Origin: Phallusia mammillata
Taxonomy: Eukaryota
Length of the DNA: 64,000 nt
Reading direction: 5' to 3'
Assembly: GCA_965637545.1 (NCBI GenBank)
Contig: OZ281499.1
Span: forward strand, 4,402,001 to 4,466,000
The translations under genes were made by a program, and so were the position numbers. Under the pieces are notes generated by a model, which saw only the letters and a list, made by a program, of their open reading frames with translations, ran no database searches and had not been told where the DNA came from. Position 1 is the stretch's first letter, and the number at the start of each line of letters is the position of its first letter. This document shows positions 11,040 through 64,000 of the stretch, in pieces.

Positions 11040-12264
11040 ATGAGTTTGTCGTTTGAAAACGTGCTTGATTTGATGAACATAACCCTTAAAGTTGGTGATC
11101 AAGATTCTGTAAATCCAAAGAGGTTTTCCGATTTTCAAGGAGCTTTTCGGGACGACCTCGAATCAAGAATTCCACGCTTTGCAAATAAAGGACAAATGTT
11201 TGCATTTGATCATCTACAGTTTTACAAAATTGAGATTGGTGATTTTAACGGAAAACAAGTTCTCCGAATGTTGATATCACTTACAAACAACAAAGAGTTG
11301 ATGAAACCTGGAAATTGTTTCGTGTTTCTTGTCAACAACGAACCAGACAATTCACTGACTGTGCTGCAAAGTTATTGTTTCGAAGGACGAGGTGTTTCGG
11401 CTGAATCTGGAGAAGAAAGAGGTTTGTTTGCAAGAGCGTTTGATGACAAAACGTGTTTCAAGCGTCAAAAGAACCCTGAGTTTGTCGGCTACGATTCAAA
11501 AACGCTTGAAAAATTTCGTTTCACTTTATCTGAGCAATATGAGATATACATGCAACAGAAGATGTCCAATTTGGAACCAAAATATCGTCGATTGTTTTGG
11601 GGAGTTTTGTTCGACAAAGCCAAATGTCACGTGATCAGCTGGAAAGTACACAAATATATAAAAAACTTTCCAAAAGCCTCCTTTGTCAAATTAGCACTTG
11701 ATAATGGATGTAGTGGAAAGTTGCAGGCGGTTTTTAACGACCACAATTTGAATGAGGACATTGAAAATATAAAAAAACAGGCTGCTAACAAAAGCTCAAG
11801 CCTAGATGAAGTTCACCAATACAAAGCAGATCTTCGTTTGAAAGGAGCTAAAACAATCATTGATCGGTGAGTAAACAGAATACCAACGTTTGTTTGCATA
11901 TCTAGCTTCCATGTACTAAAAGGTAACATCAATCAGAGTGTTTGTACATCCATAACTACTGGCATTATTCAAACAAATGACTTGATTACAAATGTATGTG
12001 TGTTTATTTGTGATTATCAATTTGAAATAAGCCTTTTACTTTTCAAAAACAAAAATTATACAAAAATCAATGAAATTTAATTTGCGGTTAGTTCGCTGAT
12101 GCAACAAACCGACGCAGACTTTTAATTAAGCGAATATGCATAAACATGTTTATTTAAATTTCATTTTGTTTTGTCTCAGGATTTTTCCTCCCAATGCTGA
12201 AGGAAAATACGATGACGAAAAAGTAAGACAAGTTGCTGATGAGATGAAGAAATTTTACGAATGA
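11040..12264 (+). CDS. Array family paralog 4, ~303 aa; 'LMNITLK' N-type, module B
   Basis: Exon 11040-11866, donor CG|GTGAGT, 313-nt intron, exon 12180-12264. Confidence 0.92.
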
Positions 12265-12619
12265 GATATTAGTTTGTAGTAATGTACAGTGTTTTTACAC
12301 CGAAGTTTTTTTCTATAATTTAGATTCATAGCCAATGAGCCCCCTTGTAACTGTATGCATACGCTTATATGTCACTAACTTACAGTAAAAATTATACAAA
12401 TGTGAATGTGTGTATGCGAATTAACGATACATTTGTACTGTAGATGTAACGCTTGTGTGGCAAATAAAGTATATTTTTAGATGATTAAAATTGGTATGTT
12501 GGGGGCAAAAGCGAAAGAAACCAAATTTGTAGGGAACCAATAGGTGAAAACGTAAAGTATTAGACCGTATATTTGAAAAAATAAAATCTCAAGTCGAGAT
12601 ATTCTCTTTTGGTTTCGTC

Positions 12620-14939: not shown

Positions 14940-16050
14940 ATGAGTTTGTCATTTGAAGAAGTCCTTGGCTTGCTAAGCATCACTGTTGAAGTAGACGACA
15001 ACGATTTTCCAAACATTCAGGAGATGCTCAACTTTGAGGGACAATTTAGGCAGTTTCTGGAAGGAAAACTACAGCACTACCTAAAAAAAGGAAAATTTAT
15101 TGCAATTTCCAATTTTGAATATTACAAAATTGAAATTGGCCAGTTAAACGGAAAACAAATTCTTCGAATGTTGATATCACTCACAAACGACGAAGAGTTG
15201 ATGAAAGGTGGAAATTGTTTTGTGTGCTCTGTAAACGATGTCGCGGAACAAGCAATTATGGTATACTCAAAATATTCTATTGAACCAAAAGGTGCCGTTG
15301 CAGAAAAAGAAGAGGAACGAGGAAACTGGTCTAAGGCATTTGATGAAAAAACATGCATCAAACAACGCAGAAATCCAAAATATCGTGGTTTAGACAAACA
15401 AACAATCGAACAGTTTCGTTCCACTTTATCAGAGCAATACAACAGCTTTTTGTCAACAAAAATGGCAGATTTGCAACAACAATATCGTCGGTTGTTCTTT
15501 GGAGCGGTTTTCGAGATTGCTAAGTGTCACGTGAGGTATTGGGAAGTTTACAAACATTTAAAAAACTTTCCATCTGCATCTCTTATCAAATTGGCAATTG
15601 ATAACGGATACAGTGGAAAGTTGCAGGCTGTATTTAACGACCATGGTATCATGAACGGTTTGTTTAAAGAAATCAGCAAACAGCTTTGTGAAGAAGAAAC
15701 ACTATCTGTCTACCATGCTCGTAAAGATGAACTACGGAAAGAAGGAGCAAAGTTAATTATTGACAAGTAAGTTAGCTACCTTCTGTTGGAAAATGTCACC
15801 ATTAGTGAAATGCTAGCTATGCAAATCGAGTATAACAGCATAAAAGCAACTGGCACACACATTAGGTGCAAAAATGGCGTTAGAATGTAGCATTTTTTAT
15901 TTTTTTTCATATTACCAACATGAGACATATTGTTTGCGCAAACGCAAATTGTTTTCTCATTTTAGAATTTTCCCACCAACTGTTGAAGGAAAGTACGATA
16001 AAAGTGAAATCACGAAAGTTGCTGATGAGATGAAATCATTTTACTTGTGA
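14940..16050 (+). CDS. Array family paralog 5, ~303 aa; 'EEVL' N-type, module D
   Basis: Exon 14940-15766, 199-nt intron, exon 15966-16050 (K-IFPPTVEGKYDKSEITKVADEMKSFYL*). Confidence 0.92.
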
Positions 16051-17259: not shown

Positions 17260-18246
17260 ATGATTTTGTCGTTTGAAAACGTGCTTGATTTGTTAAACAT
17301 AGCCATTACAGTTGGTGATCAAGATTCTATAGATCCACAATTATTTTTCGAATTTCAAGGAGATTTTCGGGACTACCTTGAGAGAAGAATTCCGTACTTA
17401 CGAAGCAAGGGAAGAACATTTTTATTTGAAAGCTTTTGTCATCACAAAATTGAGATTGGTGATCTCAACGGAAAACAAGTTCTTCGAATGTTGATATCAC
17501 TCACAAACCACAAAGAGTTGATAAAAGATGGAAATTGCTTCGTGTTTCTAGTCAACAACGAACCAAATACCTCACTGACTCTGTTGTATGAATATTCGTT
17601 TGAAACTCAAAGTGCTGCATCTGTAAATGAGAGAGGCAATTGGGCGAGGGCTTTCGATGACAAAACTTGCGTTAAACGTCAAAACAATCCAGAAAGGTAC
17701 CTTGGATTAGATCCACAAACGATGCACAAATTTCGCTCCTCATTATGTCAGCAATATGAGATATACATGCAACAGAGGATGGCCAACCTGCAGCATAATT
17801 ATCGTCGATTATTTTTCGGAGTTTTGTTTGAAATTGCAAAGTGTCACGTCAAACATTGGAGACTTCACAAACATTTAAAAAACTTTCCAACGGCTTCTCT
17901 TATCAAATTAGCACTTGATAATGGATGCAGTGGAAAGTTGCAAGCTGTTTTCAACAACCACAATTTGGATACTTCATCCATTATGAGACAAACAAGGAAT
18001 AGAGAAGAACAAATTGCGAAAGTCCACCAGGAAAAAGCCAGACTACGTTTGGAGGGAGCAAAGGTCATCATTGACAAGTGAGTTAAAGAATTTAAGACAC
18101 ACAATAAGTGAAACAAATTACATTGAGTTTGGTTTGTCTAAACTCTTCTTGTTTATCACAGGATTTTTCCACCGAATGCTCAAGGAAAATATGATAATGA
18201 AAACGTGAGACAAGTTGCTGATGAGATAAAGAAATTTTATGAATGA
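17260..18246 (+). CDS. Array family paralog 6, ~300 aa; module C
   Basis: Exon 17260-18077, 84-nt intron, exon 18162-18246. Confidence 0.92.
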
Positions 18247-21451: not shown

Positions 21452-22566
21452 ATGAGTTTGTCATTTGAAGAAGTCCTTGACCTGCTAAGCATCACTGTTG
21501 AAGTAGACGACAACGATTTTCCGAAAATTCAGGAGATGCCCAACTTTGAGGGACAATTTAGGCAGTTTCTGGAAGGAAAACTACAGCATTACCTAAAAAA
21601 AGGAAAAGTGACAAAACTTTCCAATTTTGAATATTACAAAATTGAAATTGGCGAGTTAAACGGAAAACAAATTCTTCGAATGTTGATATCACTAACAAAC
21701 AACGAGGAGTTGATGAAAGACGGAAATTGTTTCGTGTGCTGTGTAAACGATGTCGGAGAAAATTCAGTTGTTGTATTTTCAAAAAATTGTATTGAATCAA
21801 GAGGTGCCGTTGCAGAGAACGAAGAGGAACGAGGAAACTGGTCTAAGGCATTTGATGAAAAAACATGCATCCTACAACGCAGAAATCCAAGATATCTTGG
21901 TTTAGACAAACAAACAATCAAAAAGTTTTGTTCCACTTTATCAGAGCAATACAACAGCTTTTTGTCAACAAAAATGGCAGATTTGCAACCACAATATCGT
22001 CGGTTGTTTTTCGGAATTGTGTTGGAAATTGCCAAGTGCCATATCAGACATTGGGATGCTTACAAACATTTAAAAACCCTTCCAACTGCTTCTCTTATCA
22101 AGTTGGCAATTGATAATGGATGTAGTGGAAAGCTGCAGGCTGTTTTTAACGAACATGATATCATGAAAGGTTTGTTTAAAGAAATCAATCCACAGCTTTG
22201 TAGAGAAGAAAGACTTTCCCTCTATTACGCTCGTAAAGATGAACTACGAAAAGAAGGAGCACAGTTAATTATTGACAAGTAAGTTTGTTACCTTCTGTTG
22301 GAAAATGTAACCATTTAGTAAAATGCTAGCTATGCAAATCGGGGGTAACGGCACAAAGGCAATGGCGCACACGTTAAGTGCAAAAATGGCTTTAAAGCGT
22401 ACCTTCTTTCATTGTTGTTTGATATATTGCCACAATGAGACACATTGTTTTCGAAGACGCAAATTCCCTTTCTCGTTTCAGAATTTTCCCACCAACTGCT
22501 GAAGGAAAGTACGATAAAAGTAAAGTAACGAAAATTGCTGATCAGATGAAATCATTTTACTTGTAG
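21452..22566 (+). CDS. Array family paralog 7, ~303 aa; EEVL N-type, module D
   Basis: Exon 21452-22278, 203-nt intron, exon 22482-22566. Confidence 0.92.
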
Positions 22567-24606: not shown

Positions 24607-25706
24607 ATGAGTTTGTTGTTTGAAAACGTGCTTGATTCGATGAACATAACCCTTAAAGTTGGTGATCGAGATTCTGTACCTCCAAAGAGGTTTTCCGATT
24701 TTCAAGGAGCTTTTCGGGACGACATGGAATCAAGAATTCCACGCTTTGCAAATCAAGGACAAATGTTTGCTTTTAATCATCTACAGTTTTACAAAATTGA
24801 GATTGGTGATCTCAACGGAAAACAAGTTCTTCGAATGTTGATATCACTCACCAACAACGAAGGGTTAATGAAACCTGGAAATTGTTTCCTGTTTCTTGTC
24901 AACAACAAACCAGATAATTCACTGACTGTGCTGCAAAGTTATTGGTTCGAAGCACGAGGTGTTTCGGCTGAATCTGGAGAAGAAAGAGGTTTGTTTGCAA
25001 GAGCGTTTGATGACAAAACGTGTTTCAAGCGTCAAAGAAAGCTGACTGTGTCGGCTACGATTCACAAACACTTGGAAAATTTCGCTCCACATTATCTGAG
25101 CAATATGAGATATACATGAAACAGAAGATGGCCAGTTTGGAACCAAAAGATCGTCGATTGTGTTGGGGAGTTGTGTTCGAGATTGCAAAGTGTCACGTGA
25201 GACATTGGAAAGTTCACACACATTTAAAAAACTTTCCAACAGCCTCCCTTATGAAACTGGCAATTGACAATGAATTAAGTGGAAAGTTGCAGGCTGTTTT
25301 TAACGAACATAATATCACAAAAGATGTGTTTAAAGAAATCAGTCCACGGCTTAGTGAGGAAGAAAGAGTTTCTGCCTACCATGCTCGTAAAGATGAACTA
25401 CGAAAAGAAGGAGCAAAGTTAATTATTGACAAGTATGTATGCACCTTTATACTGGAAAATGTCGCCATTAGCCTAGTGAAGTGCAAATCCGGTGTAACAG
25501 CATCAAAGCAACTGGCACACAAGCTATGTGCATAAATGGCGCTAAAATGTAGCATTATTTCCCGTTTTTTATATACTACCAACATGGGACATCTTGAACT
25601 CAAATTTGCTTCTCATTTCAGAATTTTCTCACCAACTGCTGAAGGAAAGTACGATAAAAGTGAAGTAACAAAAGTTGCTGATGAGATGAAATCATTTTAC
25701 TTGTAA
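24607..25706 (+). pseudogene. Paralog 8, 1-nt frameshift at ~25035; chimeric (LMN N-type, module D)
   Basis: CAAAG instead of CAAAAG splits ORFs 24607-25119 and 25020-25535. Donor at 25433 (GTATGT), last exon 25622-25706. Confidence 0.85.
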
Positions 25707-26937: not shown

Positions 26938-27924
26938 ATGAGCTTGTCGTTTCAAAACGTGCTTGATTTATTAAATATATCAATTGAAGTTGCTGATCAA
27001 GATTCTTTGGATCCACAAAGATTTTCAGAATTTAAAGGAGCATATCGAGAATATCTTAAGGACAGAGTTTCGTACTTTCGAAGCGAGGGAAGAGACATTT
27101 CTTTTGAAAATTTACAATTTTACAAAATTGAGATTGCTGATCTAAATGGAAAACAAGTCCTTCGAATGTTGATATCACTTTTAAACAACGAAGGGTTGAT
27201 AAAAGATGGAAATTGCTTTGTGTTTCTTACCAACAACGAACCAGATACTTCAATGACTGTGCTTTGCAGACATTGGATTGAGCTACGAGGCACTTTGATT
27301 GAATCGGATAAAGAAAAAGGAAATTGGTTTAAAGCTTTTGATGACAAATTATGTCAGAAAAGGCAAAATAACCCTAGTTATATTGGCTTGGATGACAAAA
27401 CTATCAAAAAGCTTCGTTCCACTTTACCAGAGGAATATATAAAATACATGGAGCAAAACATGGCTGATCTGCAACCGAAATATCGTCGATTGTTTTTTGG
27501 AATTACATACGAAATAGCAAAGTGTCACGTGAAACATTGGCTGAACTACGAACACTTGAAGGATTTACCCAGGTCATCTCTTATTAAGTTAGCGATTGAT
27601 AATGGATGCAGTGGAAAGTTGCAGGCGGTTTTTAACCACCATTTTTTACATGTTTCTTTTATTCGTAAAACAACTACAGATAGACAGGAACAAATTAGCA
27701 AAACTCAACAACAAAAAGCCGAATGGCGCAGAGAAGGAGCAAAGGAGATTATTGATTGGTAAGTCAAACTTTCATCAGCAGCAAAAAGTAATTAACACCA
27801 ATAGTTGATTATTTGTGTAACTAGTTTTGTCTGTCATAGGATTTTTCCACCAAACGCAGAAGGAAAATACAATGGTGAAGAAGTGAAAAAGGCTGCTGAC
27901 AAGATAAAGAGATTTTACGAATAG
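26938..27924 (+). CDS. Array family paralog 9, ~301 aa; module A
   Basis: Exon 26938-27758, 81-nt intron, exon 27840-27924. Confidence 0.92.
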
Positions 27925-29854: not shown

Positions 29855-31379
29855 ATGAGTTTGTCGTTTCAAAACGTGCTTGATTTGTTAAACATAACAA
29901 TTGAAGTGGACGATCAAGATTCTATAGACCCACAAAGATTTTCAGATTTTCATGGCACATTTCGAGACCACCTTAAAAAAAGAGTGGCATACTTTGAAAG
30001 TGAAGGAAACACATTTTTATTTGACGATCTTCAATATTACAAAATTGAGACTGGTAATATGAATGGAAAACAAGTTCTTCGAATGTTGATATCACTCACA
30101 AACAACGAAACTTGGATGCAAAATGGAAATTGTTTTGTTTTTCTGGTCAACAACGAACCAGATACCTCCTTTACAGTGTTACGCAGGTACTGGTTTGAAC
30201 TAACCACCGTTTTGTTTCATTCAAAACAAGAAAGGGGCAATTGGGTGAGAGCGTTTGATGACAAAACATGCGAGAAACGGCAAAATAACCCTCAAAAATA
30301 TGTCGGGTTAGATTCACAAACGATCAACATATTTCGCTCCAAATTATCTCAGCAATATGAGATGTATATGAACCAGAAGATGGCCAACCTGCAGCCTAAT
30401 TATCGTCGATTGTTTTGGGGCGTTGTGTTCGAAATAGCGAAGTGTCACGTGACCCACTGGAAAGTTTACAAACATTTAAAAAACTTTCCAACTTCTCTTG
30501 TCAAATTAGCACTTGATAATGGATGCAGTGGAAACTTGCAGGCGATTTTTAACGATCACAATTTGGATATTTCGTCCAAATCGAGTCAAACAAGTAGTAA
30601 AGAAGAACATATTGCGGAAGTCCACAACATAAAAGCCAAACTACGTTCGGAGGGGTCAAAGGTCATCATTGACAAGTAAGTTCAAGAATAAGAAGGGCAC
30701 AATCGGTGAAACAAATCACATTGAGTATGGTTTGTCTAAGCCAGGGAGTGGAACCGCTTGTCATATGGGTTCATGTTCGGTTCGGGTTCACTTGGTTTTG
30801 TTTTTAGGGGTTCGGGTTCGGTTCGGGTTTTTAAAAATATATGTTTTCGGGTTCGGGTTTTGTTCCTGTTTGGGCAAATTATCCGGTCCCAACTGGTTTG
30901 CGGTTTTTAAACCAGTTTAAAATTTTATTTATTTTAATTTAATTCTACCCATCATCTACCCGACCTTAACAAACTCCAAAAGAATTTTGCTGGTACACTG
31001 TTATTTTTGACACGCCCTATAAGTGTTATATCGCGTATTCTTCAGTGCGCTGTTTTGAACAAAATCACAAAATATCAAACAGACTGCATTTTTTACTGGT
31101 TCGGTTCCGGTTTGGGTCCAACGCCAAACGAAATACGGGGTTCAACTCCGGTTCGGGTTTTCAAAAAAACGTAATTAGCGGTTCGGGTTCGGTTCGGGTT
31201 TAATGAAATTAATCGCTCAAACCGGTTCGCGGGTTCGGGTTCAGTTCCGGTTCGACTCCCTGGTCTAAACTCTAAACTTTTCTGTTTATCGCAGGATTTT
31301 TCCACCGAATGCTGAAGGAAAGTATGATGGTGACAAAGTGAGACAAGTTGCTGATGCGATAAAGAGATTTTATGAATGA
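29855..31379 (+). CDS. Array family paralog 10, ~301 aa; module C; MITE in intron
   Basis: Exon 29855-30675, 619-nt intron, exon 31295-31379. Confidence 0.9.
30742..31262. mobile_element. Non-autonomous hAT MITE, 521 bp, intronic
   Basis: TIRs CAGGGAGTGGAACCG / CGGTTCGACTCCCTG; TSD GTCTAAGC / GTCTAAAC; many GGTTCGG subterminal repeats. The empty site GTTTGTCTAAACTC is present in the paralog-6 intron (~18136). Confidence 0.9.
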
Positions 31380-33032: not shown

Positions 33033-34149
33033 ATGAGTTCGTCGTTTGAAAACGTGCTTGATTTATTAAATTTCACTATTGAAGTTGGAGACCGAGATTC
33101 TGTGGATCCACAAAGATTTTCAGATTTTGAAGGAAGGTTTCGTGACGAACTGGAAAAAAGATTCAAATCATTTCAAGATGAAGGAGCAACATTTTCTTTT
33201 TCACATTTTCAATATTACAAGATTCAGATTGACAATCTCCATGGAAAACAAGTTCTTCGAATGTTGATATACCTCACAAACAACGAAATTTGGATGCAAG
33301 ATGGAAATTGCTTTGTGTTTCTTGTCAACAACGAACCAGATACTTCACTGACTGTGCTTCGCAGTTATTGTTGGTTTGAACCTAGAAGTGTTTTGGCTAA
33401 GTCTGGAGAAGAAAAAGGAAGACACGCAAGAGCATTTGATGACAAAACATGTTACAAGCGCCAAAAGATAGCTGACTTTGTCGGCTACGATTCACAAACA
33501 CTTGAAAATTTTCGCTCCACATTACCTGAGCAATATGAGATATACATGCAACAGACGATGTCCAATTTGGAACCAAAGCATCGTCGGTTGTTTTTTGGAA
33601 TTGTGTTCGAGATAGCAAAGTGTCACGTGAGACATTGGAAAGTTCACAAACATTTAAAACACTTCCCAACAGCCTCCCTTGTCAAATTGGCACTTGATAA
33701 TGGATGTAGTGGAAAGCTGCAACCGGTTTTTAACGAACATAATATTCTGAAAGATTTGTTTAAAGAAATCAGCAAACAGCTGAGTGAAGAAGAAAGAGTT
33801 TCTGTCTACCATGCTCGTAAAGATGAACTACGAAAAGAAGGAGCAAAGTTAATTATTGACAAGTAAGTTTTCTGCCTTCTGTTTGAAATAGTCACCATTA
33901 GTGAAATGCTAGCTATGCAAATCGGATATAACAGCATAAAAGCAACTGGCACACACATTAGGTCCAAAAATGGCTTTAAAACGTACCTTTTTTATTTTTT
34001 TGCTTCTATATTATTAACACGAGACACATTGTTTTCGCAAACACAATTCCTGTTCTCGTTTCAGAATTTTCCCACCAACTGCTGAAGGAAAGTACGATAA
34101 AAGTAAAGTGACGAAAGTCACTGATGAGATGAAATCATTTTACTTGTAA
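33033..34149 (+). CDS. Array family paralog 11, ~304 aa; 'SSSFEN' N-type, module D
   Basis: Exon 33033-33862, 202-nt intron, exon 34065-34149. Confidence 0.92.
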
Positions 34150-36111: not shown

Positions 36112-37426
36112 ATGAGTTTGTCATTTGAAGAAGTCCTAAACTTGCTAAGCATCACTGTTGAAGTAGACGACGACGATTTTCCCAACATTCAGGAGATGCT
36201 CAACTTTGAGGGACAATTTAGGCAGTTTCTGGAAGGAAAACTACAGCACTACCTAAAAAAAGGAAAAGTGACACAACTTTTCAATTTTGAATATTACAAA
36301 ATTGAAATTGGCGAGTTAAACGGAAAACAAATTCTTCGAATGTTAATATCACTAACAAACAACGAGGAGTTGATGAAAGATGGAAATTGTTTTGTGTGCT
36401 GTGTAAACGATGTCGGAGAAAATGCAATTATTGTATTCTCAAAATATTGCATTGAGCCTAAAGGGGCTGTTGCAGAGAACAAAGGGGAGCGAGGAAACTG
36501 GTCTAAGGCATTTGATGAAAAAACATGCATCCTACAACGCAGAAATCCAAAATATCTTGGTTTAGACAAACAAACAATCGAACAGTTTCGTTCCACTTTA
36601 TCAGAGCAGTACAACAGCTTTTTGTCAACAAAAATGGCGGATTTGCAACCACAATATCGTCGGTTGTTTTTTGGAGTTGTATTCGAAATAGCGAAGTGTC
36701 ATGTGAGGCATTGGGAAGTTTACAAACATTTAAAACACTTTCCAACTGCTTCTCTTATCAAATTGGCAATTGATAATGGATACAGTGGAAAGTTGCAGGC
36801 CGTGTTTAACGACCATGACATCATGAAAGATTTGTTTGATGAAATCAATCCACAGCTTTGCACAGAAGAAAGACTTTCTGTCTACCATGCTCGTAAAGAT
36901 GAACTACGAAAAGAAGGAGCAAAGTTAATTATTGACAAGTAAGTTTGTTACCTTCTGTTGCAAAAAGTCACAATGCTAACTCGGATGTAACAGCATAAAG
37001 GTAACTGACACACACGTTAGGTTAAAAAATGGCGTTAGAATGTAGCATTTTTTAGTTGTTTTTTCATATACTCCCAACATGAGACATATTGAGATTAGAA
37101 GCCCAATCATTTTTTTGATATCGCGCGGTGTTTTCGTGGCGTTGTGACGTGCTTGCGTTTCATTCTTTTTTCCTTTGTTTATCGTGCACTGTACTAGTCG
37201 CATTCAGTGTTATTTACCCTGATGAAGACGACCTGTATAGGACGTCGAAACGTCGGAATAAAATTACATTTGCCAGAAGAGCTCTACAAACTTGATGAGA
37301 CATATTGTTTTCGCAAACGAACATTTCCTTTCTCGTTTCAGAATTTTCCCACCAACTGCTGAAGGAAAGTACGATAAAAGTAAAGTAAGTAAAGTCGCTG
37401 ATGAGATGAAATTATTTTACTTGTGA
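36112..37426 (+). CDS. Array family paralog 12, ~303 aa; EEVL N-type, module D; intron carries the ribozyme insert
   Basis: Exon 36112-36938, 403-nt intron, exon 37342-37426. Confidence 0.92.
37092..37294 (+). mobile_element. 203-bp retroposon-like insertion (Penelope-like/retrozyme remnant)
   Basis: Flanked by a 13-bp direct repeat ATGAGACATATTG (37079-37091, 37295-37307). Absent from the homologous introns of paralogs 5, 7, 11 and 16. Confidence 0.8.
37210..37261 (+). ncRNA. Minimal type I hammerhead ribozyme
   Basis: CUGAUGA (37219-25), extra A, stem II GACG/CGUC capped by CCU-GUAU-AGG, GAAA (37247-50), palindromic stem III ACGU, cleavage triplet GUC (37252-54), stem I UUAUU-(UA)-CC / GG-AAUAA. 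Confidence 0.75.
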
Positions 37427-38602: not shown

Positions 38603-39591
38603 ATGAGTTTGTCGTTTCAAAACGTGCTTGATTTGTTAAACATAACAATTGAAGTTGGTGATCAAGATTCTGTAGATCAACAAAGATTTTCAGATTTTAA
38701 AGGAGCATTTCGAGAATATCTTAACGATAGAGTTTCGTACTTTCGAAGCGAGGGAAGAGACATTTCTTTTGAAAATTTACAATTTTACAAAATTGAGATT
38801 GCTGATTTAAATGGAAAACAAGTCCTTCGAATGTTGATATCACTTTTAAACAACAAAGAGTTGATAAAAGATGGAAATTGCTTCGTGTTTCTTACCAACA
38901 ACGAACCAGATACTTCAATGACTGTGCTTTGCAGATATTGGATTGAGCTACGAGGCACTTTGACTGAATCGGATAAAGAAAAAGGAAATTGGTTTAAAGC
39001 TTTTGATGACAAATTATGTCAGAAAAGGCAAAATAACCCACGTTATATTGGCTTGGATGACAAAACTATCAAAAAGCTTCGTTCCACTTTGCCAGAGGAA
39101 TATATAAAATACATGGAGCAAAACATGGCTGATCTGCAACCGAAATATCGTCGATTGTTTTTTGGAATTGCATTCGAAATTGCAAAGTGTCACGTGAAAC
39201 ATTGGCTGATCTACGAACACTTGAAGAACTTTCCCAGGTCGTCTCTAATTAAGTTGGCGATTGATAACGGATGCAGTGGGAAGTTGCAGGCGGTTTTTAA
39301 CCACCATTTTTTACATGTTTCTTTTATTCGTAAAACAACTACAGATAGACAGGAACAAATTACCAAAACTCAACAACAAAAAGCCGAATGGCGCAGAGAA
39401 GGAGCAAAGGAGATTATTGATTGGTAAGTCAATCTTTTATAAGCAGCTAAATAGAATATTAACACTAATAGTTGATTATTTGTGTAACTAGTTTTATCTG
39501 TCACAGGATTTTTCAACCAAACGCTGAAGGAAAATACAATGGTGAAGAAGTGAAAAAGGCTGCTGACAAGATAAAGAGATTTTACGAATAG
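38603..39591 (+). CDS. Array family paralog 13, ~301 aa; module A; close to paralog 9
   Basis: Exon 38603-39423, 83-nt intron, exon 39507-39591. Confidence 0.92.
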
Positions 39592-41627: not shown

Positions 41628-42614
41628 ATGAGCTTGTCGTTGGAAAATGTGCTTGATTTGTTGAACATATCAATTGAAGTTGGTGATCAAGATTTTGTAG
41701 AGCCACAAAGATTTTCAGAATTTGAAGAAACATTTCGAGACGATCTTAGGAGAAGAATTTCCGACTTACAAAGCAACGGAAGAACGTTTTCATTCGAAAA
41801 TTTACAATTTTACAAATTTAAGATCGGTGATCTGAATGGAAAACAAGTTCTTCGAATGTTGATATCACTCACAAACAACGAAGAGTTGATGAAAGATGGA
41901 AATTGTTTCGTGTTTCTGGTCAACAATGAACCGGATATTTCACTGATTGTGCTTTACAGATATTGGATTGAACTACGAGGTACTTTGACTGAATCGGATA
42001 AAGAAAAAGGAAATTGGTTTAAAGCTTTTGATGACAAATTATGTCAGAAAAGGCAAAATAATCCACATTTTGTTGGTTTGGATAACGAAACTATTAAAGA
42101 GTTTCATTCCACTTTGCCTGAGGAATATACAAAATATATGGAGCAAAAAATGCCCAATCTGCAACCAAAATATCGTCGATTGTTTTTGGAATTGTATTCG
42201 TAATAGCAAAGTGTCACGTGAAAAGTTGGCTGGTTTACGAACACTTAAAAGACTTTCCTAGGTCGTCTCTCATTAAGTTAGCACTTGATAACGGATGTAG
42301 TGGAAAGTTGCAGGCAGTTTTCAACAACCATTTTTTGGACGTTTCTTGCATTCATAAAAAAACTACAGATAGAAATGAACAAATTACCAAAATTCAACAA
42401 CAGAAAGCCGAATGGCGCAGAGAAGGAGAAAAAGATATTATTGATTGGTGAGTCAAACTTTTATAAATAGCAAAAAAGTAACACCATCAAGAGCCTATAG
42501 TTTGTTTAAACTAATTTTGTCTGTCATAGGATTTTTCCACCAAATGCCGAAGGTAAATACGATGGGGAAGAAGTGAAAAAGGCTGCTGACAAGATAAAGA
42601 GATTTTATAAATAG
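41628..42614 (+). pseudogene. Paralog 14, 1-nt frameshift at ~42185; chimeric; module A
   Basis: TTTTTGG instead of TTTTTTGG splits ORFs 41628-42203 and 42218-42451. Donor at 42448, last exon 42530-42614. Confidence 0.85.
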
Positions 42615-43974: not shown

Positions 43975-44962
43975 ATGAGTTTGTCGTTTGCAAACGTGCT
44001 TGATTTGTTGAACATAACAATTGAAGTTGGTGATCAAGATTCTGTAGATCCACAACTATATTTCGAATTTCAAGGAGATTTTAGAGAATATCTTGAGGGA
44101 AGAGTTCCGTATTTTCAAAGCGAGGGAAGAGAGATTTCTTTTGAAAATTTACAATTTTATAAAATTGGCATTGATCATCTGACCGGAAAACAAGTTCTTC
44201 GAATGTTGATATCACTTACAAACAACGAAAAGTTGATGAAAGATGGAAATTGCTTTGTGTTTCTTACCAACAAAGAACCAGAAATTTCACTGACCGTGAT
44301 TTACAGATATTGGATTGAAATACGAACCGTTTTGGCTAAATCGAATGAAGATAAAGGAAATTGGCCAAAAGCTTTTGATGACAAAACATGTCAGGAAAGG
44401 CAAAATGACTCACGTTACATTGGGTTGGATGACAAAACTATTAAAGAGTTTCGTTCCACTTTACCTGAGGAATATTCAAAATACATGGAGCATAACATGG
44501 CTGATCTGCAACCAAAATATCGTCGATTGTTTTTTGGAATTGTATTCGAAATAACAAAGTGTCACGTGAAAAATTGGCTGGTCTATGAACACTTGAAAGA
44601 CTTTCCAAGGTCGTCTCTCATTAAGTTGGCGATTGATAACGGATGTAGTGGAAAATTGCAGGCGGTTTTTAACAACCACTTTTTACACGTTTCTTATCTT
44701 CGCGAAAAAACTACCGATAGACAGGAACAAATTACCAAAATTCAACAACAAAAAGCCCGATGGCGCAGAAAAGGAGCAAAGGAGATTATTAATTGGTAAG
44801 TCAAACTTTTAAAAAAACAAAGATGTTATTAACACCAATAGTTGATTATCACTGTACACTCGTTTTGTCTTTCGTAGGATTTTTCCACCAAACGCCGAAG
44901 GTAAATACGATGATGAAGAAGTGAAAAAGGCTGCTGCCAAGATAAAGAGATTTTATGAATAG
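43975..44962 (+). CDS. Array family paralog 15, ~301 aa; module A
   Basis: Exon 43975-44795, 82-nt intron, exon 44878-44962. Confidence 0.92.
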
Positions 44963-47376: not shown

Positions 47377-48493
47377 ATGAGTTTGTCGTTTGAAAACGTG
47401 CTTGATTTGTTAAACATAACAATTGAAGTTGGTGATCAAGATTCTGTGGATCCACAAAGATTTTCAGATTTTAAAGGAACATATCGAGACCAACTTGAAA
47501 TAAGAATGTCGTACTTTCAAAGTCAGGGACGTACGTTTTCATTTAAAAATTTACAATATTACAAAATTGAGATTGGTGATCTTAACGGAAAATAAGTTCT
47601 TCGAATGTTGATATCACTCACAAACAACAAAGAGTTGATGAAACCTGGAAATTGTTTCGTGTTTCTGGTCAACAATGAACCAGATACTTCACTGACTGTG
47701 TTTTACAGTCATTGGTTTGAGCCACGAGCTACTTCTGGATCGGATAATGATAGAGGAAATTGGACTCGAGCCTTTGATGACAAAACACGAGAAGAGAGGC
47801 AGAAATATCCCTTTTCCTTTGGATATGACAACCAAGCCATCAATGAGTTTCGCTCCACATTATCTGAGCAATATGTGAATTATATGAGGCAAAAAATGGT
47901 CAATATAGAACCAAAATATCGTCGATTGTTTTTTGGAGTTTTCTTTGAAGTTGCCAAATGTCACGTGAGAGATTGGAAAGTTCACAAATATTTGAAAAAC
48001 TTTCCCACTGCTTCTCTTATCAAGTTGGCAATTGATAATGGATGTAGTGGAAAGTTGCAGGCTGTTTTTAACGACCATGACATCTTGAAAGATTTGTTTA
48101 AAGACATCAGTCCACGGCTTAGTGAAGAAGAAAGACTTTCTGTCTACCATGCTCGTAAAGATGAACTACGAAAAGAAGGAGCAAAGTTAATTATTGACAA
48201 GTAAGTTTGCTACCTTCTGTTGCAAAAAGTCACAATTAGTAAAATGATAGCTATGCAAATCGTGTGTAACAGAATAAAGGCAATGGCGCACACGTTAAGT
48301 GCAAAAATGTCTTTAAAACGTACCATTTTTTCATTGTTTATGTATATATATTATTACCAACATGAGACATATTGTTTTCGCAAACGCAAATTCCCTTTCT
48401 CGTTTCAGAATTTTCCCACCTACTGCTGAAGGAAAGTACGATAAAAGTGAAGTAACAAAAGTCGCTGATGAGATGAAATCATTTTACTTGTAA
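47377..48493 (+). pseudogene. Paralog 16, single in-frame nonsense (CAA>TAA at 47593); module D
   Basis: ORFs 47377-47595 and 47605-48204 are in the same frame. Donor at 48201, last exon 48409-48493. Confidence 0.88.
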
Positions 48494-50415: not shown

Positions 50416-51356
50416 ATGAGTTTGTCGTTTGAAAACGTGCTTGATTTGATGAACATAACCCTTAAAGTTGGTGATCAAGATTCTGTAAGACCAAAGAGGT
50501 TTTCCGATTTTCAAGGAGCTTTTCGGGACGACCTCGAATCAAGAATTCCATACTTTCAAAACAAAGGACAAATGTTTACATTTGCAAGTCTTCAATTTTA
50601 CAAAATTGAGATTGGTGATTATAATGGAAAACAGGTTCTCCGAATGTTGATATCACTCACAAACAACAGAGAGTGGATGAAACCTGGAAATTGTTTCGTG
50701 TTTCTGGTCAACAACGAACCAGATACTTCACTGACTGTGCTTCACAGTTATTGTTTCGAAGTACGAGGTGTTTCGGCTGAATCGGGAGAAGAAAGAGGTT
50801 TGTTTGCAAGAGCGTTTGATGACAAAACGTGTTTCAAGCGTCAAAAGAACCCTGAGTTTGTCGGCTACGATTCACAAACACTTGAAAAATTTCGCTCCAC
50901 ATTATCTGAGCAATATGAGATATACATGCAACAGAAGATGTCCAATTTGGAACCAAAATATCGTCGATTGTTTTTTGGAGTTGTGTACGAAATTGCAAAG
51001 TGCCATGTGAGGCATTTAGAAGTTTACAAACATTTATGGAACTTTCCAAAAGCCTCCCTTGTCAAATTAGCACTTGATAATCGATTTAGTGGAAAGTTGC
51101 AAGCGGTTTTTAACGACCACAATTTGGATATTTCGTCCCATTCGGGTAAAAAAGTCCACAGCATCAAAGCCAAACTGCGTTTGGAGGGGGCAAAGGTCAT
51201 CATTGACATGTAAGTCGAAAACGAGACAGCAGTGAACAATAAATAAATTGTGAGTTTTCTGTTCATTACAGGATTTTTCCACCGAATGCTGAAGGAAAAT
51301 ACGAAGACGAAAAAGTAAGACAAGTTGCTGACGAGATGAAGAAATTTTATGAATGA
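50416..51356 (+). CDS. Array family paralog 17, ~292 aa; LMN N-type with a shortened module C
   Basis: Exon 50416-51209, 62-nt intron, exon 51272-51356; in-frame deletion in the C-terminal variable segment. Confidence 0.9.
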
Positions 51357-54300: not shown

Positions 54301-54702
54301 TTGGCCTTGAGCAAGGTCCGGTTTTGGAACTTTACTATTCAGGCACAAAAGGTCTGTTTAAATTCTTCAATGTTTAGCTTCGTAATTCTCAGTCTTGCAT
54401 TGCACTATGCGAAATTTCAGCGTTCCGTCGTTTACGCATCAGTGTGACGTCACACACACGAACGCACTGCTGTGTGGCGACACCAAGCGACGCAAAACCA
54501 ACTTAAGGTTTTGAGATTTATACAATGATAGCGTATCGATTGTTGTACATTACCTATGCACCCATCCTTTACGCCACTGTAACTAGTTTACATTGCAATA
54601 CAGAGTGAATTTACAAACTTATAATAATAACTCAGGGTGCTTTTGCAATAGCGACATATGCTAAATTATCTTTTTAGTTATTTTGGTCACCATTGCGCAT
54701 AT

Positions 54703-56482: not shown

Positions 56483-57589
56483 ATGAGTTCGTCGTTTGAA
56501 AACGTGCTTGATTTATTAAATTTCACTATTGAAGTTGGAGACCGAGATTCTGTGGATCCACAAAGATTTTCAGATTTTGAAGGAAGGTTTCGTGACGAAC
56601 TGGAAAAAAGATTCAAATCATTTCAAGATGAAGGAGCAACATTTTCTTTTTCACATTTTCAATATTACAAGATTCAGATTGACAATCTCAATGGAAAACA
56701 AGTTCTTCGAATTTTGATATCACTCACAAACAACGAAATTTGGATGCAAGATGGAAATTGCTTTGTGTTTCTTGTCAACAACGAACCAGATACTTCACTG
56801 ACTGTGCTTCGCAGTTATTGTTGGTTTGAACCTAGAAGTGTTTTGGCTAAGTCTGGAGAAGAAAAAGGCAGACACGCAAGAGCATTTGATGACAAAACAT
56901 GTTACAAGCGCCAAAAGATAGCTGACTTTGTCGGCTACGATTCACAAACACTTGAAAAATTTCGCTCCACATTACCTGAGCAATATGAGATATACATGCA
57001 ACAGACGATGTCCAATTTGGAACCAAAGCATCGTCGGTTGTTTTTTGGAATTGTGTTCGAGATAGCAAAGTGTCACGTGAGACATTGGAAAGTTCACAAA
57101 CATTTAAAACACTTCCCAACAGCCTCCCTTGTCAAATTGGCACTTGATAATGGATGTAGTGGAAAGCTGCAAGCGGTTTTTAACGAACATAATATTCTGA
57201 AAGATTTGTTTAAAGAAATCAGCAAACAGCTGAGTGAAGAAGAAAGAGTTTCTGTCTACCATGCTCGTAAAGATGAACTACGAAAAGAAGGAGCAAAGTT
57301 AATTATTGACAAGTAAGTTTTCTGCCTTCTGTTTGAAATAGTCACCATTAGTGAAATGCTAGCTATGCAAATCGGATATAACAGCATAAAAGCAACTGGC
57401 ACACACATTAGGGCCAAAAACGTACCTTTTTTCATTTTTTTGCTTCTATATTATTAACACGAGACACATTGTTTTCGCAAACACAATTCCTGTTCTCATT
57501 TCAGAATTTTCCCACCAACCGCTGAAGGAAAGTACGATAAAAGTAAAGTAACAAAAGTTGCTGATGAGATGAAATCATTTTACTTGTAA
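56483..57589 (+). CDS. Array family paralog 18, ~304 aa; near-identical to paralog 11
   Basis: Exon 56483-57312, 192-nt intron, exon 57505-57589. Confidence 0.92.
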
Positions 57590-59552: not shown

Positions 59553-60876
59553 ATGAGTTTGTCATTTGAAGAAGTCCTAAACTTGCTAAGCATCACTGTT
59601 GAAGTAGACGACGACGATTTTCCCAACATTCAGGAGATGCTCAACTTTGAGGGACAATTTAGGCAGTTTCTGGAAGGAAAACTACAGCACTACCTAAAAA
59701 AAGGAAAAGTGACACAACTTTTCAATTTTGAATATTACAAAATTGAAATTGGCGAGTTAAACGGAAAACAAATTCTTCGAATGTTAATATCACTAACAAA
59801 CAACGAGGAGTTGATGAAAGATGGAAATTGTTTTGTGTGCTGTGTAAACGATGTCGGAGAAAATGCAATTATTGTATTCTAAAAATATTGCATTGAGCCT
59901 AAAGGGGCTGTTGCAGAGAACAAAGGGGAGCGAGGAAACTGGTCTAAGGCATTTGATGAAAAAACATGCATCCTACAACGCAGAAATCCAAAATATCTTG
60001 GTTTAGACAAACAAACAATCGAACAGTTTCGTTCCACTTTATCAGAGCAGTACAACAGCTTTTTGTCAACAAAAATGGCGGATTTGCAACCACAATATCG
60101 TCGGTTGTTTTTTGGAGTTGTATTCGAAATAGCTAAGTGTCATGTGAGGCATTGGGAAGTTTACAAACATTTAAAACACTTTCCAACTGCTTCTCTTATC
60201 AATTTGGCAATTGATAATGGATACAGTGGAAAGTTGCAGGCCGTGTTTAACGACCATGACATCATGAAAGATTTGTTTGATGAAATCAATCCACAGCTTT
60301 GCACAGAAGAAAGACTTTCTGTCTACCATGCTCGTAAAGATGAACTACGAAAAGAAGGAGCAAAGTTAATTATTGACAAGTAAGTTTGTTACCTTCTGTT
60401 GCAAAAAGTCACAGTAATATGCTAACTCTGCAAATCGGCTGTAACAGCATAAAGGTAACTGACACACACGTTAGGTTAAAAAATGGCGTTAGAATGTAGC
60501 ATTTTTTAGTTGTTTTTTTCACATACTCCCAACATGAGACATCTTGAGATTGGAAGCCCAATCATTTGATATCGCGCGGTGTTTTCATACGTTGTGACGT
60601 GCTTGCGTTTCATTCTTTTTTCCTTTGTTTATCGTGCACTGTACTAGTCGCATTCAGTGTTATTTACCCCGATGAAGACAACCTGTATAGGACGTCGAAA
60701 CGTCGGCATAAAATCACATTTGCCAGAAGAGCTCTACAAATTTGACGAGACATATTGTTTTCGCAAACGAACATCTCCTTTCTCGTTTCAGAATTTTCCC
60801 ACCAACTGCTGAAGGAAAGTACGATAAAAGTGAAATAACGAAAGTTGCTGATCAGATGAAATCATTTTACTTGTAG
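59553..60876 (+). pseudogene. Paralog 19, duplicate of paralog 12 with a TCA>TAA nonsense at 59880
   Basis: ORFs 59553-59882 and 60063-60383 are in the same frame. Donor at 60380, last exon 60792-60876. Confidence 0.88.
60547..60744 (+). mobile_element. Second copy of the ribozyme-bearing insert, catalytic core mutated
   Basis: CCGATGA at 60669 (U4>C) and GACA in stem II; flanking 13-bp repeats each carry one mismatch. Confidence 0.78.
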
Positions 60877-62851
60877 AAACTTTTGCAAAAATGTCAAGAT
60901 GCCCAAGAACGTGTAATGATCTTTATCGAATCATTTTGTTCCTAAATGTGTAAATCTGTAAATAAATAATGTATAGTGATTGTCATTCGTTTGGTGTCAT
61001 TGCAATACAATTGACCGAAAGTTAAATGTTAGCGCAATGATATTTTTATGTGTTTTTTGACACGCACCGATGTGATTTTATGCGTACCAAAACCATTGCT
61101 CTGCAGCGACATCAAGTGACTTTCGACAAAAGTTAAGACAATTATGCGAAAATGGGACGTAAAGCGTTTGCCTTCGAATCTGACATTCGAGATCCTGTAA
61201 TACGAAATGTCATTTGAAAAATCTAGCAGTGGAACCAGCAGCATTTGAACCTATAAAGACACAAAAGATTTTACTGCGTGAATACCTCTGCTTGAAAAGG
61301 GTTATCGAAAATCCGTTAAGGAATCTTCGAAAATGCTGTCATCATAAATTACTTCAATTAGTCAGCAAACAAACAGTTGAAGTATAAATTTATGTCATGT
61401 TTGCTTTTCGGTGTTTGATTGCGAAACATCAAAGCTTTTTACCTGGTTTGGGTATTTACTCCGTGTAATGTTGTAAATCAAACCCATAAATCAAAAGGCC
61501 CTATAAGCAATTTAGTGTATTTACAACTCCCAGCAAGCTAAAGAATTAACTACAGCTTTCCCGATAGTAAAATATGTCATTGCAAAGCGTCAGTAACTGG
61601 ATTTTCTCTTGTAGCGTTATGTTGCATTTAAAATTGGCTGATAAATTTTGTCTCTGTGTGTGTAAATTATAATGTATAATCTTTCCAATTTTGCAACCAA
61701 TATGATATTTTATAACATATCCTCTGCACCTAATTTAAGTCGTATTTTGCGAAACAATGCGAAACGGTCATCAAAGCTTTTGAGTGAGGGGCAAAGGTCA
61801 CATGATAAATAATTGTTATTCGATAAGCGAAATCAAATCCAACCAATATGACGTCACACTTACGAGACGCTTTATTCTGTTGCGCCACCAAGCGACACAA
61901 AATCAACTTAGATCATAACCGTTCAAATAGGGGTAGACCGCGAGACTTTAGTTCCAATCTACTTGTGCCATTAAGTTCTGTGTGAAGCGAAAAAAATGTT
62001 GCCGATATGATTGTCACTTTTGTTGCACAAAATAAATCATTTTCAGCATGACTAAAGTTAACAATGTGTCGCTATAAAATGGTGTTTGTGCCCCACGACC
62101 AACTAAGCCACACTGTCAGTATTTGAGACAAGACAGTTACGGTATGCGGTTATGTGCTTAACTTCACCACCTGTGGACAAGAAACTCATTGTAAATGTGA
62201 GGTTGAAAAAACTCGAACTCTAAATTAAATTGCTTTAATCTTAACTTTGCTTATTTCGAAAAAACTAAATAGGCTATTACAGCTTAAAACAGGTTTTTAA
62301 ACATGTCTTAAGAAAGTTTTTGAAATGCAGACATCGTAAATTATCTCCTTTGTCAGCAAACAAAACCGCTGAAGTTTAAATTAATTTGATGTTTGCTATC
62401 CAATGTCCGATTTCGTGACTGTTATTTAGATATTTACCCAGTGTCATGCTGTTAAAGGATAATTTGGAAACAAACAAATTAAGTTCGAAAAAGGCCTCCA
62501 AGCATACTATCGCGAGTTTTTCCACCCTGCAAACTAGAAAGAAGGCAAAAGATTACGTAGTCTCTTAATTGCAATACAGGCACTACATTTATTTTGTTAC
62601 AATGATATTAGTCAGTTTGTAAGTGAAATGAGTAAACTTTTAGAATAACCTTGTTCACACATTCGTGTCGCAGAAGAATCGGTTTGGGTTTATAAAATAT
62701 CAGTTAATTTATTGGTTTGTGTGCTTAACCCTAGCACCTGTGGGTGAGCTCCTCATTGTAAATGTGAGAAGTCACCAAACTCAGTTGAATAAGTTCAAAG
62801 TCTAAATACAGCACCAAATTTTGGAAACAGACAAAGAGTTAAGTTTGCAGA

Positions 62852-64000
62852 ATGAGTTTGTCGTTTGAAAACGTGCTTGATTTGATGAACATAACCCTTA
62901 AAGTTGGTGATCAAGATTCTGTAAGTCCAAAGAGATTTTCCGATTTTCAAGGAGCTTTTCGGGACGACCTCGAATCAAGAATTCTACACTATGCACAAAA
63001 AGGACAAACGTTTGCTTTTGATCATCTACAGTTTTACAAAATTGAGATTGGTGATTTAAAAGGCAAACAAGTTCTTCGAATGTTGATATCACTCACAAAC
63101 AACGAAGAGTTGATGAAACCTGGAAATTGTTTCGTGTTCCTTGTCAAAACCGAACCAGATACTTCACTGACTGTGCTTCATAAGTATTGTTTCCAAGCAC
63201 GAGGTGTTTCGGCTGAGTCTGGAGAAGAAAGAGGTTTGTTTGCAAGAGCATTTGATGACAAAACATGTTCCAAGCGTCAAAATAATCCCGAGTTTGTCAA
63301 CTACGATTCACAAACGCTTGAAAAATTTCGCTCCACATTATCTGAGCAATATGAAATATACATGAAAGAGAAAATTTTTAATTTGGAACCAAAATATCGT
63401 CGATTTTTTATTGGTGTTGTGTTCGAAATAGCCAAATGCCACGTGAGACATTGGAAAGTTTACAAACATTTAAAAAACTTTCCAACCTCTTCTCTAATCA
63501 AATTAGCACTTGATAATGAATGCAGTGGAAAGTTGCAGGCTGTTTTCAATGATCACAATTTGGATGAGGACATTGAAAATATTAAAAAACAGGCTGCCAA
63601 CAAAAGCTCAAGCCTAGATGAAGTTCACCAATACAAAGCAAATCTTCGTTTGAAGGGAGCTAAAACAATCATTGATCGGTGAGTAAACAGAATACCAACA
63701 GAAGTTTGTTTAAATATCTAGCTTCCATGTACTAAAAGGTAACGTCAATTAGAGTGTTTGTACATCCAGCACTACTGGCATTGTTTAAACAAAAGACTTT
63801 ATTACAAATGTATATGTGTTTACTTGTGATTATCAATTTGAAATAAGCCTTTTACTTTTCAAAAACAAACATTATACAAAAATCAATGAAATTTAGTTTG
63901 CGGTAAGTTCGCTCATGCAACAAACCGACGTAGACTTTAAAAGAAGCGAATATGCATAAACATGTTTAATTAAATTTCATTTTGTTTTGTCTCAGGATTT
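62852..64000 (+). CDS. Array family paralog 20; LMN N-type, module B; last exon cut by the window edge
   Basis: Exon 62852-63678, donor CG|GTGAGT, 317-nt intron, acceptor TCTCAG| at 63995. Confidence 0.88.

What the first reader, a model, noticed from the sequence alone, without database searches (positions are those of the whole stretch)
11040..63682. Combinatorial module shuffling: the same N-terminal type is joined to different C-terminal modules
Seen: after the invariant GKLQAVFN.H anchor there are four alternative ~40-aa modules. A is HFLHVSFIRKTT.DRQEQ.., B is HNL.EDIENIKKQAANK.., C is HNLDISSIMRQTRNREEQ.., and D is H.I.KDLF.EI..QL.EEE.LSVYHARKDEL. The LMN N-type carries B (11040, 62852), D (24607) or C (50416). 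Module D follows four different N-types (EEVL, LMN, SSSFEN, 47377). Each module generally travels with its own intron and last exon. Inference: recombination at conserved anchors builds a germline repertoire of mosaic proteins.
Basis: partly seen in the sequence, partly recalled or inferred. Interest (0 to 1): 0.8.

Follow-up and report, generated by a model that had tools for sequence, protein, structure and literature searches.

The report
Mosaic tandem gene array, sea squirt
A sea-squirt chromosome carries about 50 head-to-tail copies of an uncharacterised two-exon gene whose front, middle and tail segments have different family trees, so the copies are true recombinant mosaics; this is ordinary gene conversion between tandem paralogues, in a protein family of unknown function.

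Summary
The window has 20 full-length copies on the + strand (15 with an intact exon 1). They belong to an array of 51 copies over about 170 kb. Each gene has an exon 1 of about 276 codons, a short intron and a 27-codon last exon.

After the near-invariant GKLQAVFN motif the tails fall into five discrete classes, not four.

Recombination is strongly supported:
- Segment trees reject each other (ΔlnL 325-1551, against 54-150 for random-column controls).
- PHI z = -17.
- 42 of 46 non-twin copies give significant triplet breakpoints.
- Pairs with the same N-type but different tails are 91.5% identical in the N segment and 49.5% in the tail. The converse pairs are 68.9% and 89.2%.

The tail travels with its intron, last exon and about 200 nt of 3'UTR. 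One recent patch of at least 1.15 kb has two ends, which indicates gene conversion.

Junctions are spread over the whole exon and are not confined to anchors. Shuffling is incomplete.

The protein is ascidian-specific (uncharacterised relatives in Ciona and Clavelina), has no Pfam hit, and its confident model matches no known fold. The idea of a functional "repertoire" is untested. This is a new member of a known kind.

The parts
299..1575 (+). Copy g299: exon 1 299-1125, intron 365 nt, last exon 1491-1575. Divergent A-like tail (A0). Intact.
4329..5360 (+). Copy g4329: B-like tail, broken by a 5-nt deletion near 4666. B-type last exon at 5280-5360.
6654..7645 (+). Copy g6654: tail C, intron 86 nt, last exon 7561-7645. 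Intact.
11040..12264 (+). Copy g11040: LMN N-type, tail B, intron 313 nt, last exon 12180-12264 of C/E type (an extra mosaic junction). Intact. CDS 912 nt = 303 aa.
14940..16050 (+). Copy g14940: EEVL N-type, tail D, intron 199 nt, last exon 15966-16050. Intact. Four small runs of one study hold 96-100% of the sampled words of its exon 1.
17260..18246 (+). Copy g17260: tail C, intron 84 nt. Intact.
21452..22566 (+). Copy g21452: EEVL N-type, tail D, intron 203 nt. Intact.
24607..25704 (+). Copy g24607: LMN-type body (95-98% to g11040/g109926) joined to a D tail, D-length intron and D last exon (25622-25704). Best single body/tail breakpoint at alignment columns 583-590; the copying model finds further junctions. 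Frameshifted by a 1-nt deletion near 25043.
26938..27924 (+). Copy g26938: tail A, intron 81 nt. Intact.
29855..31379 (+). Copy g29855: fifth tail class E (anchor GNLQAIFN), intron 619 nt. Intact.
33033..34149 (+). Copy g33033: SSSFEN N-type with D tail, intron 202 nt. Intact. Triplet breakpoint at columns 709-721, inside the anchor.
36112..37426 (+). Copy g36112: EEVL N-type, tail D, intron 403 nt (carries an insertion of about 200 nt). Intact.
38603..39591 (+). Copy g38603: tail A. Intact. Nearest relative of the body of the out-of-window recombinant g118376.
41628..42614 (+). Copy g41628: tail A, broken by a 1-nt deletion near 42182.
43975..44962 (+). Copy g43975: tail A. Intact.
47377..48493 (+). 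Copy g47377: N cluster 15 with D tail. In-frame stop at 47593.
50416..51356 (+). Copy g50416: LMN N-type. Tail E-like then C-like with a 27-nt deletion. Intron 62 nt. ORF intact.
56483..57589 (+). Copy g56483: near-twin of g33033 (SSSFEN + D), part of a 5.1-kb segmental duplication.
59553..60876 (+). Copy g59553: near-twin of g36112. In-frame stop at 59880.
62852..64000 (+). Copy g62852: LMN N-type, tail B, intron 317 nt. The last exon (63996-64080) runs over the window end.

Best explanation
The window is the first 64 kb of a head-to-tail tandem array of about 170 kb (G000:C6:4.402-4.574 Mb). It holds 51 full-length copies, 36 of them with an intact exon 1. The family is an ascidian-specific two-exon gene encoding a protein of about 303 aa with no signal peptide.

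The array evolves by duplication and loss, plus pervasive non-allelic homologous recombination. Most exchanges look like short-tract interlocus gene conversion; occasional patches exceed 1 kb. As a result every stretch of the gene has its own genealogy.

The most variable part is the last roughly 40 codons of exon 1, which lie in the C-terminal helices of the model. It exists in five old classes that are about 50% identical at the nucleotide level, with saturated dS between classes.

Inference: this divergence leaves too little homology for exchange inside the tail. Junctions therefore resolve in the conserved block just upstream (about the last 200 nt before and including GKLQAVFN) and in the 3'UTR. 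The tail, intron, last exon and proximal 3'UTR (0.75-1.15 kb) then move as one cassette onto unrelated gene bodies.

Shown here: the mosaic structure, its statistics, the co-travelling 3' block, and one two-ended conversion patch. Inferred: the homology-barrier mechanism. Unknown: what the protein does. My guess is a fast-evolving intracellular family in which the variable C-terminal helices set partner specificity.
For: Array and gene model. The Ciona homologue XP_002129972.3 (304 aa) ends with a homologous last-exon peptide.

Incongruence:
- The four contiguous segment trees reject each other with ΔlnL 325-1551 (AU p at most 1e-3). Four random-column partitions of the same sizes give ΔlnL 54-150.
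- PHI observed 0.789 against 0.915±0.007, 0 of 1000 permutations.
- Triplet scan: 42 of 46 non-twin copies have corrected p<0.05. The best is g118376, with 210/10 sites like g38603 on the left and 1/65 on the right.

Identity by N-type and tail class:
- Same N, different tail: 91.5% (N), 87.2% (middle), 49.5% (tail).
- Different N, same tail: 68.9%, 76.3%, 89.2%.

Divergence: within a tail class dS is 0.165 in the tail but 0.67-0.87 in the body. Between classes the tail dS is saturated.

Class signal per site: AMI 0.4-0.54 from column 720 on, 0.09-0.18 upstream.

Co-travelling block: the D class runs from about +520 to +1270 relative to the ATG. g118376 is 99-100% identical to g122924 from +684 to about +1840 and about 97% identical to g38603 upstream. 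Similarity to g122924 ends on both sides.

Not assembly chimeras: donor segments are mostly 86-98% identical, not 100%. The same combination recurs in diverged copies, for example SSSFEN + D in four copies.

Tail classes are interspersed along the array.
Against: - No read or contig spans a junction. The only reads call returned unitigs of 130-490 nt, so independent confirmation of the assembly across junctions is missing.
- Expression is only indirectly indicated. Four runs of about 25 Mb from one study hold 96-100% of the sampled words of g14940 exon 1. Three other equally small runs of that study hold none of the 11040-13500 stretch.
- The class-signal step at the anchor is partly circular, because the classes were defined from the tail.
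- Triplet tests count inherited events many times.
- For most events conversion and unequal crossover cannot be told apart.
- The homology-barrier idea was not tested.
- Function is unknown: no Pfam, PDB or Atlas match.
Confidence: 0.85

Rival explanations
1. A germline-encoded combinatorial recognition repertoire. Selection favours new head/tail combinations, for example for immunity, allorecognition or genetic conflict in the sea squirt, and recombination at the anchor is the adaptive device that makes them.
For: - Discrete, old tail classes are kept on many bodies.
- The tail has the highest dN/dS in the gene, 0.44-0.54.
- The family is large and lineage-specific, with many pseudogenes.
- A kB-like decamer, GGGRNWYYCC, recurs in the spacers: 29 matches against 1.1 expected. 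These matches are copies of one repeat unit, so they are not independent.
Against: - dN/dS is below 1 in every segment.
- The protein has no signal peptide or membrane segment (inspection of the translations).
- Junctions are not confined to the anchor.
- Assortment is incomplete.
- Several mosaics are pseudogenes.
- There are no data on expression, polymorphism or binding.
Confidence: 0.1
2. Assembly artefact. Mis-joined or collapsed reads in a repetitive array create chimeric copies that do not exist in the animal.
For: - The array is highly repetitive.
- g118376 and g122924 share at least 1.15 kb at 99-100% identity, only 4.5 kb apart.
- No spanning reads could be obtained.
Against: - Most mosaic segments differ from their nearest donor by 2-14%. 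Chimeric assembly would not produce that.
- The same combinations occur in several diverged copies.
- The window lies in a contig of 27.35 Mb.
- Unitigs of an independent run cover all 30 bins of the 6 kb tested.
Confidence: 0.03
3. No exchange. Tree-like divergence with strong rate differences between segments and convergent tails mimics mosaicism.
For: The tail evolves faster than the rest of the gene and is hard to align between classes.
Against: - Random-column partitions keep the rate heterogeneity yet are 3-20 times less discordant than contiguous ones.
- The PHI test is positional.
- Within a class, tails are 89% identical on bodies that are 69% identical. This includes introns and 3'UTR, where convergence is implausible.
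Confidence: 0.02

Closest known systems
Interlocus gene conversion and unequal crossing-over in tandem multigene families, such as plant NLR/R-gene clusters, MHC and KIR hybrid genes, and fission-yeast wtf genes (recalled from general knowledge, not tested here)
   Same: Same-orientation tandem paralogues. Segment-wise discordant genealogies. Chimeric paralogues. Many pseudogenes. Exchange limited by local homology.
   Different: The protein family is unrelated and uncharacterised. Here the exchanged unit is a 3' cassette of tail, intron, last exon and 3'UTR in five discrete classes.
Sea-urchin Sp185/333 (SpTransformer) genes (recalled from general knowledge, a lead only)
   Same: An invertebrate deuterostome. 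Small two-exon genes in tight tandem clusters. Paralogues that are mosaics of shared sequence blocks.
   Different: Sp185/333 proteins are secreted. Their mosaics arise from presence or absence of elements and repeats, and they are immune-induced. Here there is no signal peptide, the mosaics are substitution-type segments of one collinear alignment, and expression is unknown.
Uncharacterised ascidian proteins: Ciona intestinalis XP_002129972.3 and XP_009860047.1, and Clavelina lepadiformis CAK8672537.1, CAK8695969-74 and others
   Same: True homologues: profile E-values from 2e-36 (the best named one) to 3e-16, full-length matches, the same length of about 300 aa, and a homologous last-exon peptide.
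   Different: Only distant similarity (the best score is 171 bits). Whether those species also have large arrays and tail classes was not examined. Consecutive Clavelina accessions hint at clustering.
Another tandem cluster in this genome: CUZD1-like CUB-CUB-ZP genes (earlier scan note s1-380845)
   Same: Same genome. A tandem cluster with patchy gene conversion and domain-specific divergence.
   Different: A different protein family and the opposite polarity (constant tail, variable heads). I did not re-examine it.

Membership tests
Tandem multigene family evolving by non-allelic gene conversion / unequal crossover | Paralogues in tandem, in the same orientation, with shared flanks | tested here: met
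   51 full-length copies, all on the + strand, spaced 2-12 kb (mostly 2-5 kb)
Tandem multigene family evolving by non-allelic gene conversion / unequal crossover | Genealogy changes along the gene more than site sampling alone explains | tested here: met
   AU tests with a random-column control, and the PHI test
Tandem multigene family evolving by non-allelic gene conversion / unequal crossover | Individually significant parent/child breakpoints | tested here: met
   42 of 46 copies have corrected p<0.05
Tandem multigene family evolving by non-allelic gene conversion / unequal crossover | A transferred tract bounded on both sides (conversion rather than a single crossover) | tested here: met
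   One case: g118376, tract from +684 to about +1840. Other events are unresolved.
Tandem multigene family evolving by non-allelic gene conversion / unequal crossover | Junctions confirmed in independent long reads or other individuals | tested here: inconclusive
   Only unitigs of 130-490 nt were available
Secreted mosaic immune effector family (Sp185/333-like) | An N-terminal signal peptide or secretion signal | tested here: not met
   The N-terminus MSLSFENVLDLLN.. is acidic/polar with no hydrophobic leader (inspection only)
Secreted mosaic immune effector family (Sp185/333-like) | Induction by immune challenge | not testable with these tools
   No usable RNA data
Somatic cassette-copy diversification (VLR, VSG or chicken-Ig pseudogene type) | Incomplete donor cassettes feeding one expressed site | tested here: not met
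   Each intact copy is a complete gene with an ATG, a GT-AG intron, its own last exon and a stop codon
Any named protein family or known fold | A significant sequence or structure match | tested here: not met
   Pfam none. PDB sequence E at least 0.02. Foldseek PDB E at least 0.035 and viral E at least 0.087. VIA Z at most 4.7 for the whole model and 3.8 for the N-domain. Atlas TM at most 0.36.

The most novel reading that the evidence does not exclude
The array is a germline combinatorial specificity system of ascidians. A conserved intracellular scaffold with a previously unseen fold carries an exchangeable C-terminal helical cassette in five classes, and selection maintains and reshuffles these to vary partner recognition in immunity, allorecognition or intragenomic conflict.
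Probability: 0.1. Interest if true: 0.75.

Novelty: new member of a known kind. Interest (0 to 1): 0.4.

Why it matters
This is a clean, quantified case of cassette-like 3' block exchange inside a large tandem array. It fits the idea, not tested here, that a divergence barrier can turn ordinary gene conversion into apparent module shuffling.

It also flags an expanded protein family, seen so far only in tunicates, with a confident predicted structure that matches no known fold and with no annotation. That makes it a reasonable target for expression and functional work in ascidians.

It does not reveal a new diversification mechanism.

Tried and rejected
- Word-index protein search: no hit.
- ESM Atlas by features: no usable hit.
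- Pfam on window proteins, distant paralogues and other-species homologues: nothing above noise.
- PDB by sequence and by profile: nothing.
- Fold searches found no credible match. I tried the full model against PDB (Foldseek), PDB representatives (VIA), the Atlas and the viral library, and the N-domain model against PDB representatives.
- Read laying on window 21400-27399, meant to bridge the g24607 junction and to see splicing, returned only short unitigs and no convincing RNA.
- Both run searches listed no run on record as RNA.
- Literature searches for the Ciona accessions and for ascidian tandem gene conversion found nothing on this family.
- Rfam at gathering threshold: no hit in the window.
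- The gap at 51.4-56.4 kb holds no ORF of 110 aa or more and no long repeats.
- A general breakpoint hot spot at conserved blocks was not significant (rho 0.34, p 0.08).
- I did not compare the protein with Botryllus BHF or fuhc, because no tool-supplied sequence was at hand.
Full report
**What is there**

The window (G000:C6:4402001-4466000, + strand; GC 35-39%) is eukaryotic DNA. A six-frame scan finds the motif G[KR]LQxVF 19 times, all on the + strand, each inside an open frame of about 276 codons. With blastn I find 20 full-length copies of this exon in the window. After fetching the flanks, the array holds 51 copies, running from window coordinate 299 to about 171600. Upstream of the window there are none in the 20 kb fetched.

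Thirty-six copies have an intact exon 1, 15 of the 20 in the window. The five broken window copies are:
- g4329: 5-nt deletion.
- g24607: 1-nt deletion near 25043.
- g41628: 1-nt deletion.
- g47377: in-frame stop at 47593.
- g59553: in-frame stop at 59880.

Each exon 1 ends two bases into a codon at a GTAAGT or GTGAGT donor. After an intron of 60-620 nt, an AG acceptor opens an 85-nt last exon that encodes I-F-P-P-(N/T)-..-F-Y-(E/L)-stop. The CDS is 912 nt, or 303 aa. The annotated Ciona homologue XP_002129972.3 (304 aa) ends with a homologous peptide, which supports this gene model.

**The observation**

The four tail types A-D are real, and there is a fifth, E. In the window E is g29855, whose anchor reads GNLQAIFN; outside the window it is g79802, g86761 and g99279.

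The classes align with each other and with distant paralogues. They are therefore diverged versions of one hypervariable region, not unrelated modules.

Clustering the first 200 nt gives 19 N clusters.
- The LMN cluster carries B three times, D once and E twice.
- The SSSFEN cluster carries D three times, B once and C once.
- The D tail sits on eight N clusters.

Intron length and last-exon type follow the tail class. The one exception is g11040, which has a B tail and B intron but a C/E-type last exon.

**Is it recombination?**

ML trees for four contiguous segments reject each other with ΔlnL 325-1551 (AU p at most 1e-3). Four random-column partitions of the same sizes give only ΔlnL 54-150. 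The PHI statistic is 0.789 against 0.915±0.007 in 1000 permutations, z = -17.

A single-breakpoint triplet scan, corrected for all triplets and breakpoints, is significant for 42 of 46 non-twin copies.

Mean nucleotide identity by N-type and tail class:

| Pair type | N segment | Middle | Tail |
|---|---|---|---|
| Same N, different tail | 91.5% | 87.2% | 49.5% |
| Different N, same tail | 68.9% | 76.3% | 89.2% |

Within a tail class dS is 0.165 in the tail but 0.67-0.87 in the body. Between classes the tail dS is saturated.

**Where the junctions are**

The association of individual sites with tail class is 0.4-0.54 (AMI) from alignment column 720 onward. It falls to 0.09-0.18 immediately upstream; the anchor occupies columns 698-722.

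However, body/tail breakpoints from the triplet scan range over columns 560-735, and a second group lies at 378-390. A copying-model Viterbi path needs 5-8.5 donor switches per gene, spread over the whole exon. Switches are fewest inside the tail and correlate only weakly with conservation (rho 0.34, p 0.08).

Among D-class genes with different N-types, identity rises gradually:
- 0.60 at +400.
- 0.87 at +640.
- 0.76-0.94 through the tail, intron, last exon and about 200 nt of 3'UTR.
- About 0.6 after +1270.

So the 3' block really does co-travel, but its 5' edge is a zone rather than a point.

**A worked event**

g118376, outside the window, is about 97% identical to g38603 from -40 to +683. 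It is 99-100% identical to g122924, which lies 4.5 kb downstream, from +684 to about +1840. Similarity to g122924 ends on both sides. The local gene order also parallels the window block g36112-g38603-..-g47377. This is a two-ended patch, which means gene conversion of at least 1.15 kb, with g118376 as the recipient.

**Not an assembly artefact, as far as can be judged**

Most mosaic segments differ from their nearest donor by 2-14%. The same combinations recur in diverged copies. The one reads call returned only unitigs of 130-490 nt, which cover the region but cannot bridge junctions. Direct confirmation is therefore missing.

**What the protein is**

- No Pfam hit and no PDB sequence hit.
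- Nothing in the word-index search.
- A profile of window copies plus distant paralogues found 49 representatives among 1.84 billion proteins. Those paralogues come from C1:9.44-9.48 Mb, C6:1.48-1.55 Mb and C6:4.10 Mb. Of the 20 representatives I looked up, every one that carries a name is an uncharacterised protein of Ciona intestinalis or Clavelina lepadiformis. An earlier scan note also calls this genome a sea squirt.
- AlphaFold2 with the paralogue alignment gives a confident model (pLDDT 89.8, pTM 0.87). It has an N-terminal alpha/beta domain and a C-terminal helical domain. The variable tail lies in the last helices, and the lowest confidence is at residues 231-250.
- No credible structural neighbour was found in PDB, the viral library or the Atlas, for the whole model or for the N-domain alone.
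- There is no signal peptide or membrane segment on inspection.
- dN/dS is 0.17-0.33 in the body and 0.44-0.54 in the tail.

**Expression**

Four runs of about 25 Mb of contigs from one study hold 96-100% of the sampled words of g14940 exon 1. Three other equally small runs of that study hold none of the 11040-13500 stretch. This is what RNA runs would look like, but nothing is on record as RNA.

**Verdict**

Recombination is firmly supported. The "anchor" and "repertoire" parts of the interpretation are only partly supported or untested.

The mechanism is ordinary non-allelic gene conversion or crossover in a tandem array. I infer that the deep divergence of five tail classes makes the 3' end behave as a cassette. 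This is a new member of a known kind, in an uncharacterised family that has so far been seen only in tunicates.

Noticed in passing
window:32392-37520 and window:55857-60985: A 5.1-kb segmental duplication (96.2% identity overall; the two exon 1 pairs are 99-100% identical) carries g33033+g36112 and g56483+g59553. The second copy of the EEVL gene has acquired an in-frame stop at 59880. Another pair is 22437-24389 and 60747-62697 (97.8%).
   Followed up: partly
window: 3601, 3856, 5830, 9528, 16452, 18578, 31736, 34549, 37795, 40211, 45894, 51842, 57990: A kB-like decamer GGGRNWYYCC (mostly the palindrome GGGAATTCCC) matches 29 times against 1.1 expected. Where the upstream gene's last exon is mapped, the motif lies about 330-620 nt after its stop codon. 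At 9528 a TGACGTCA (CRE-like) follows 50 nt later. The copies belong to one repeat unit, so the enrichment is not independent evidence of function.
   Followed up: partly
window:36939-37341 (intron of g36112) and 60380-60791 (g59553): These D-type introns are about 400 nt instead of about 200 nt because of an insertion. Three out-of-window EEVL copies have introns of 390-396 nt. Rfam at gathering threshold finds nothing in the window.
   Followed up: partly
window:3163-3294, 3395-3465, 9141-9203, 29401-29464, 45921-45977, 54702-54756: Orphan fragments of exon 1 and of the last exon lie in the spacers. They look like debris of deleted or rearranged copies.
   Followed up: no
G000:C6:1476001-1550000 (L029-L033) and G000:C1:9440001-9480000 (L025-L028): Two further clusters of distant paralogues (20-28% and 35-42% identity) share the ~270-280-codon first exon. 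At least 17 copies in both orientations lie in the C6:1.48-1.55 Mb cluster. Single copies lie at C6:4100098 and C6:26411142.
   Followed up: partly
Clavelina lepadiformis proteins CAK8695969, CAK8695971, CAK8695974: Near-consecutive accession numbers on one 10.8-Mb record suggest that the family is also clustered in Clavelina.
   Followed up: no
window:21400-24600: Unitigs of two DNA runs differ from the assembly at many sites (about 4% in places), and most laid pieces are 95-99% alike. This could be high heterozygosity or cross-mapping of paralogues; it was not resolved.
   Followed up: no
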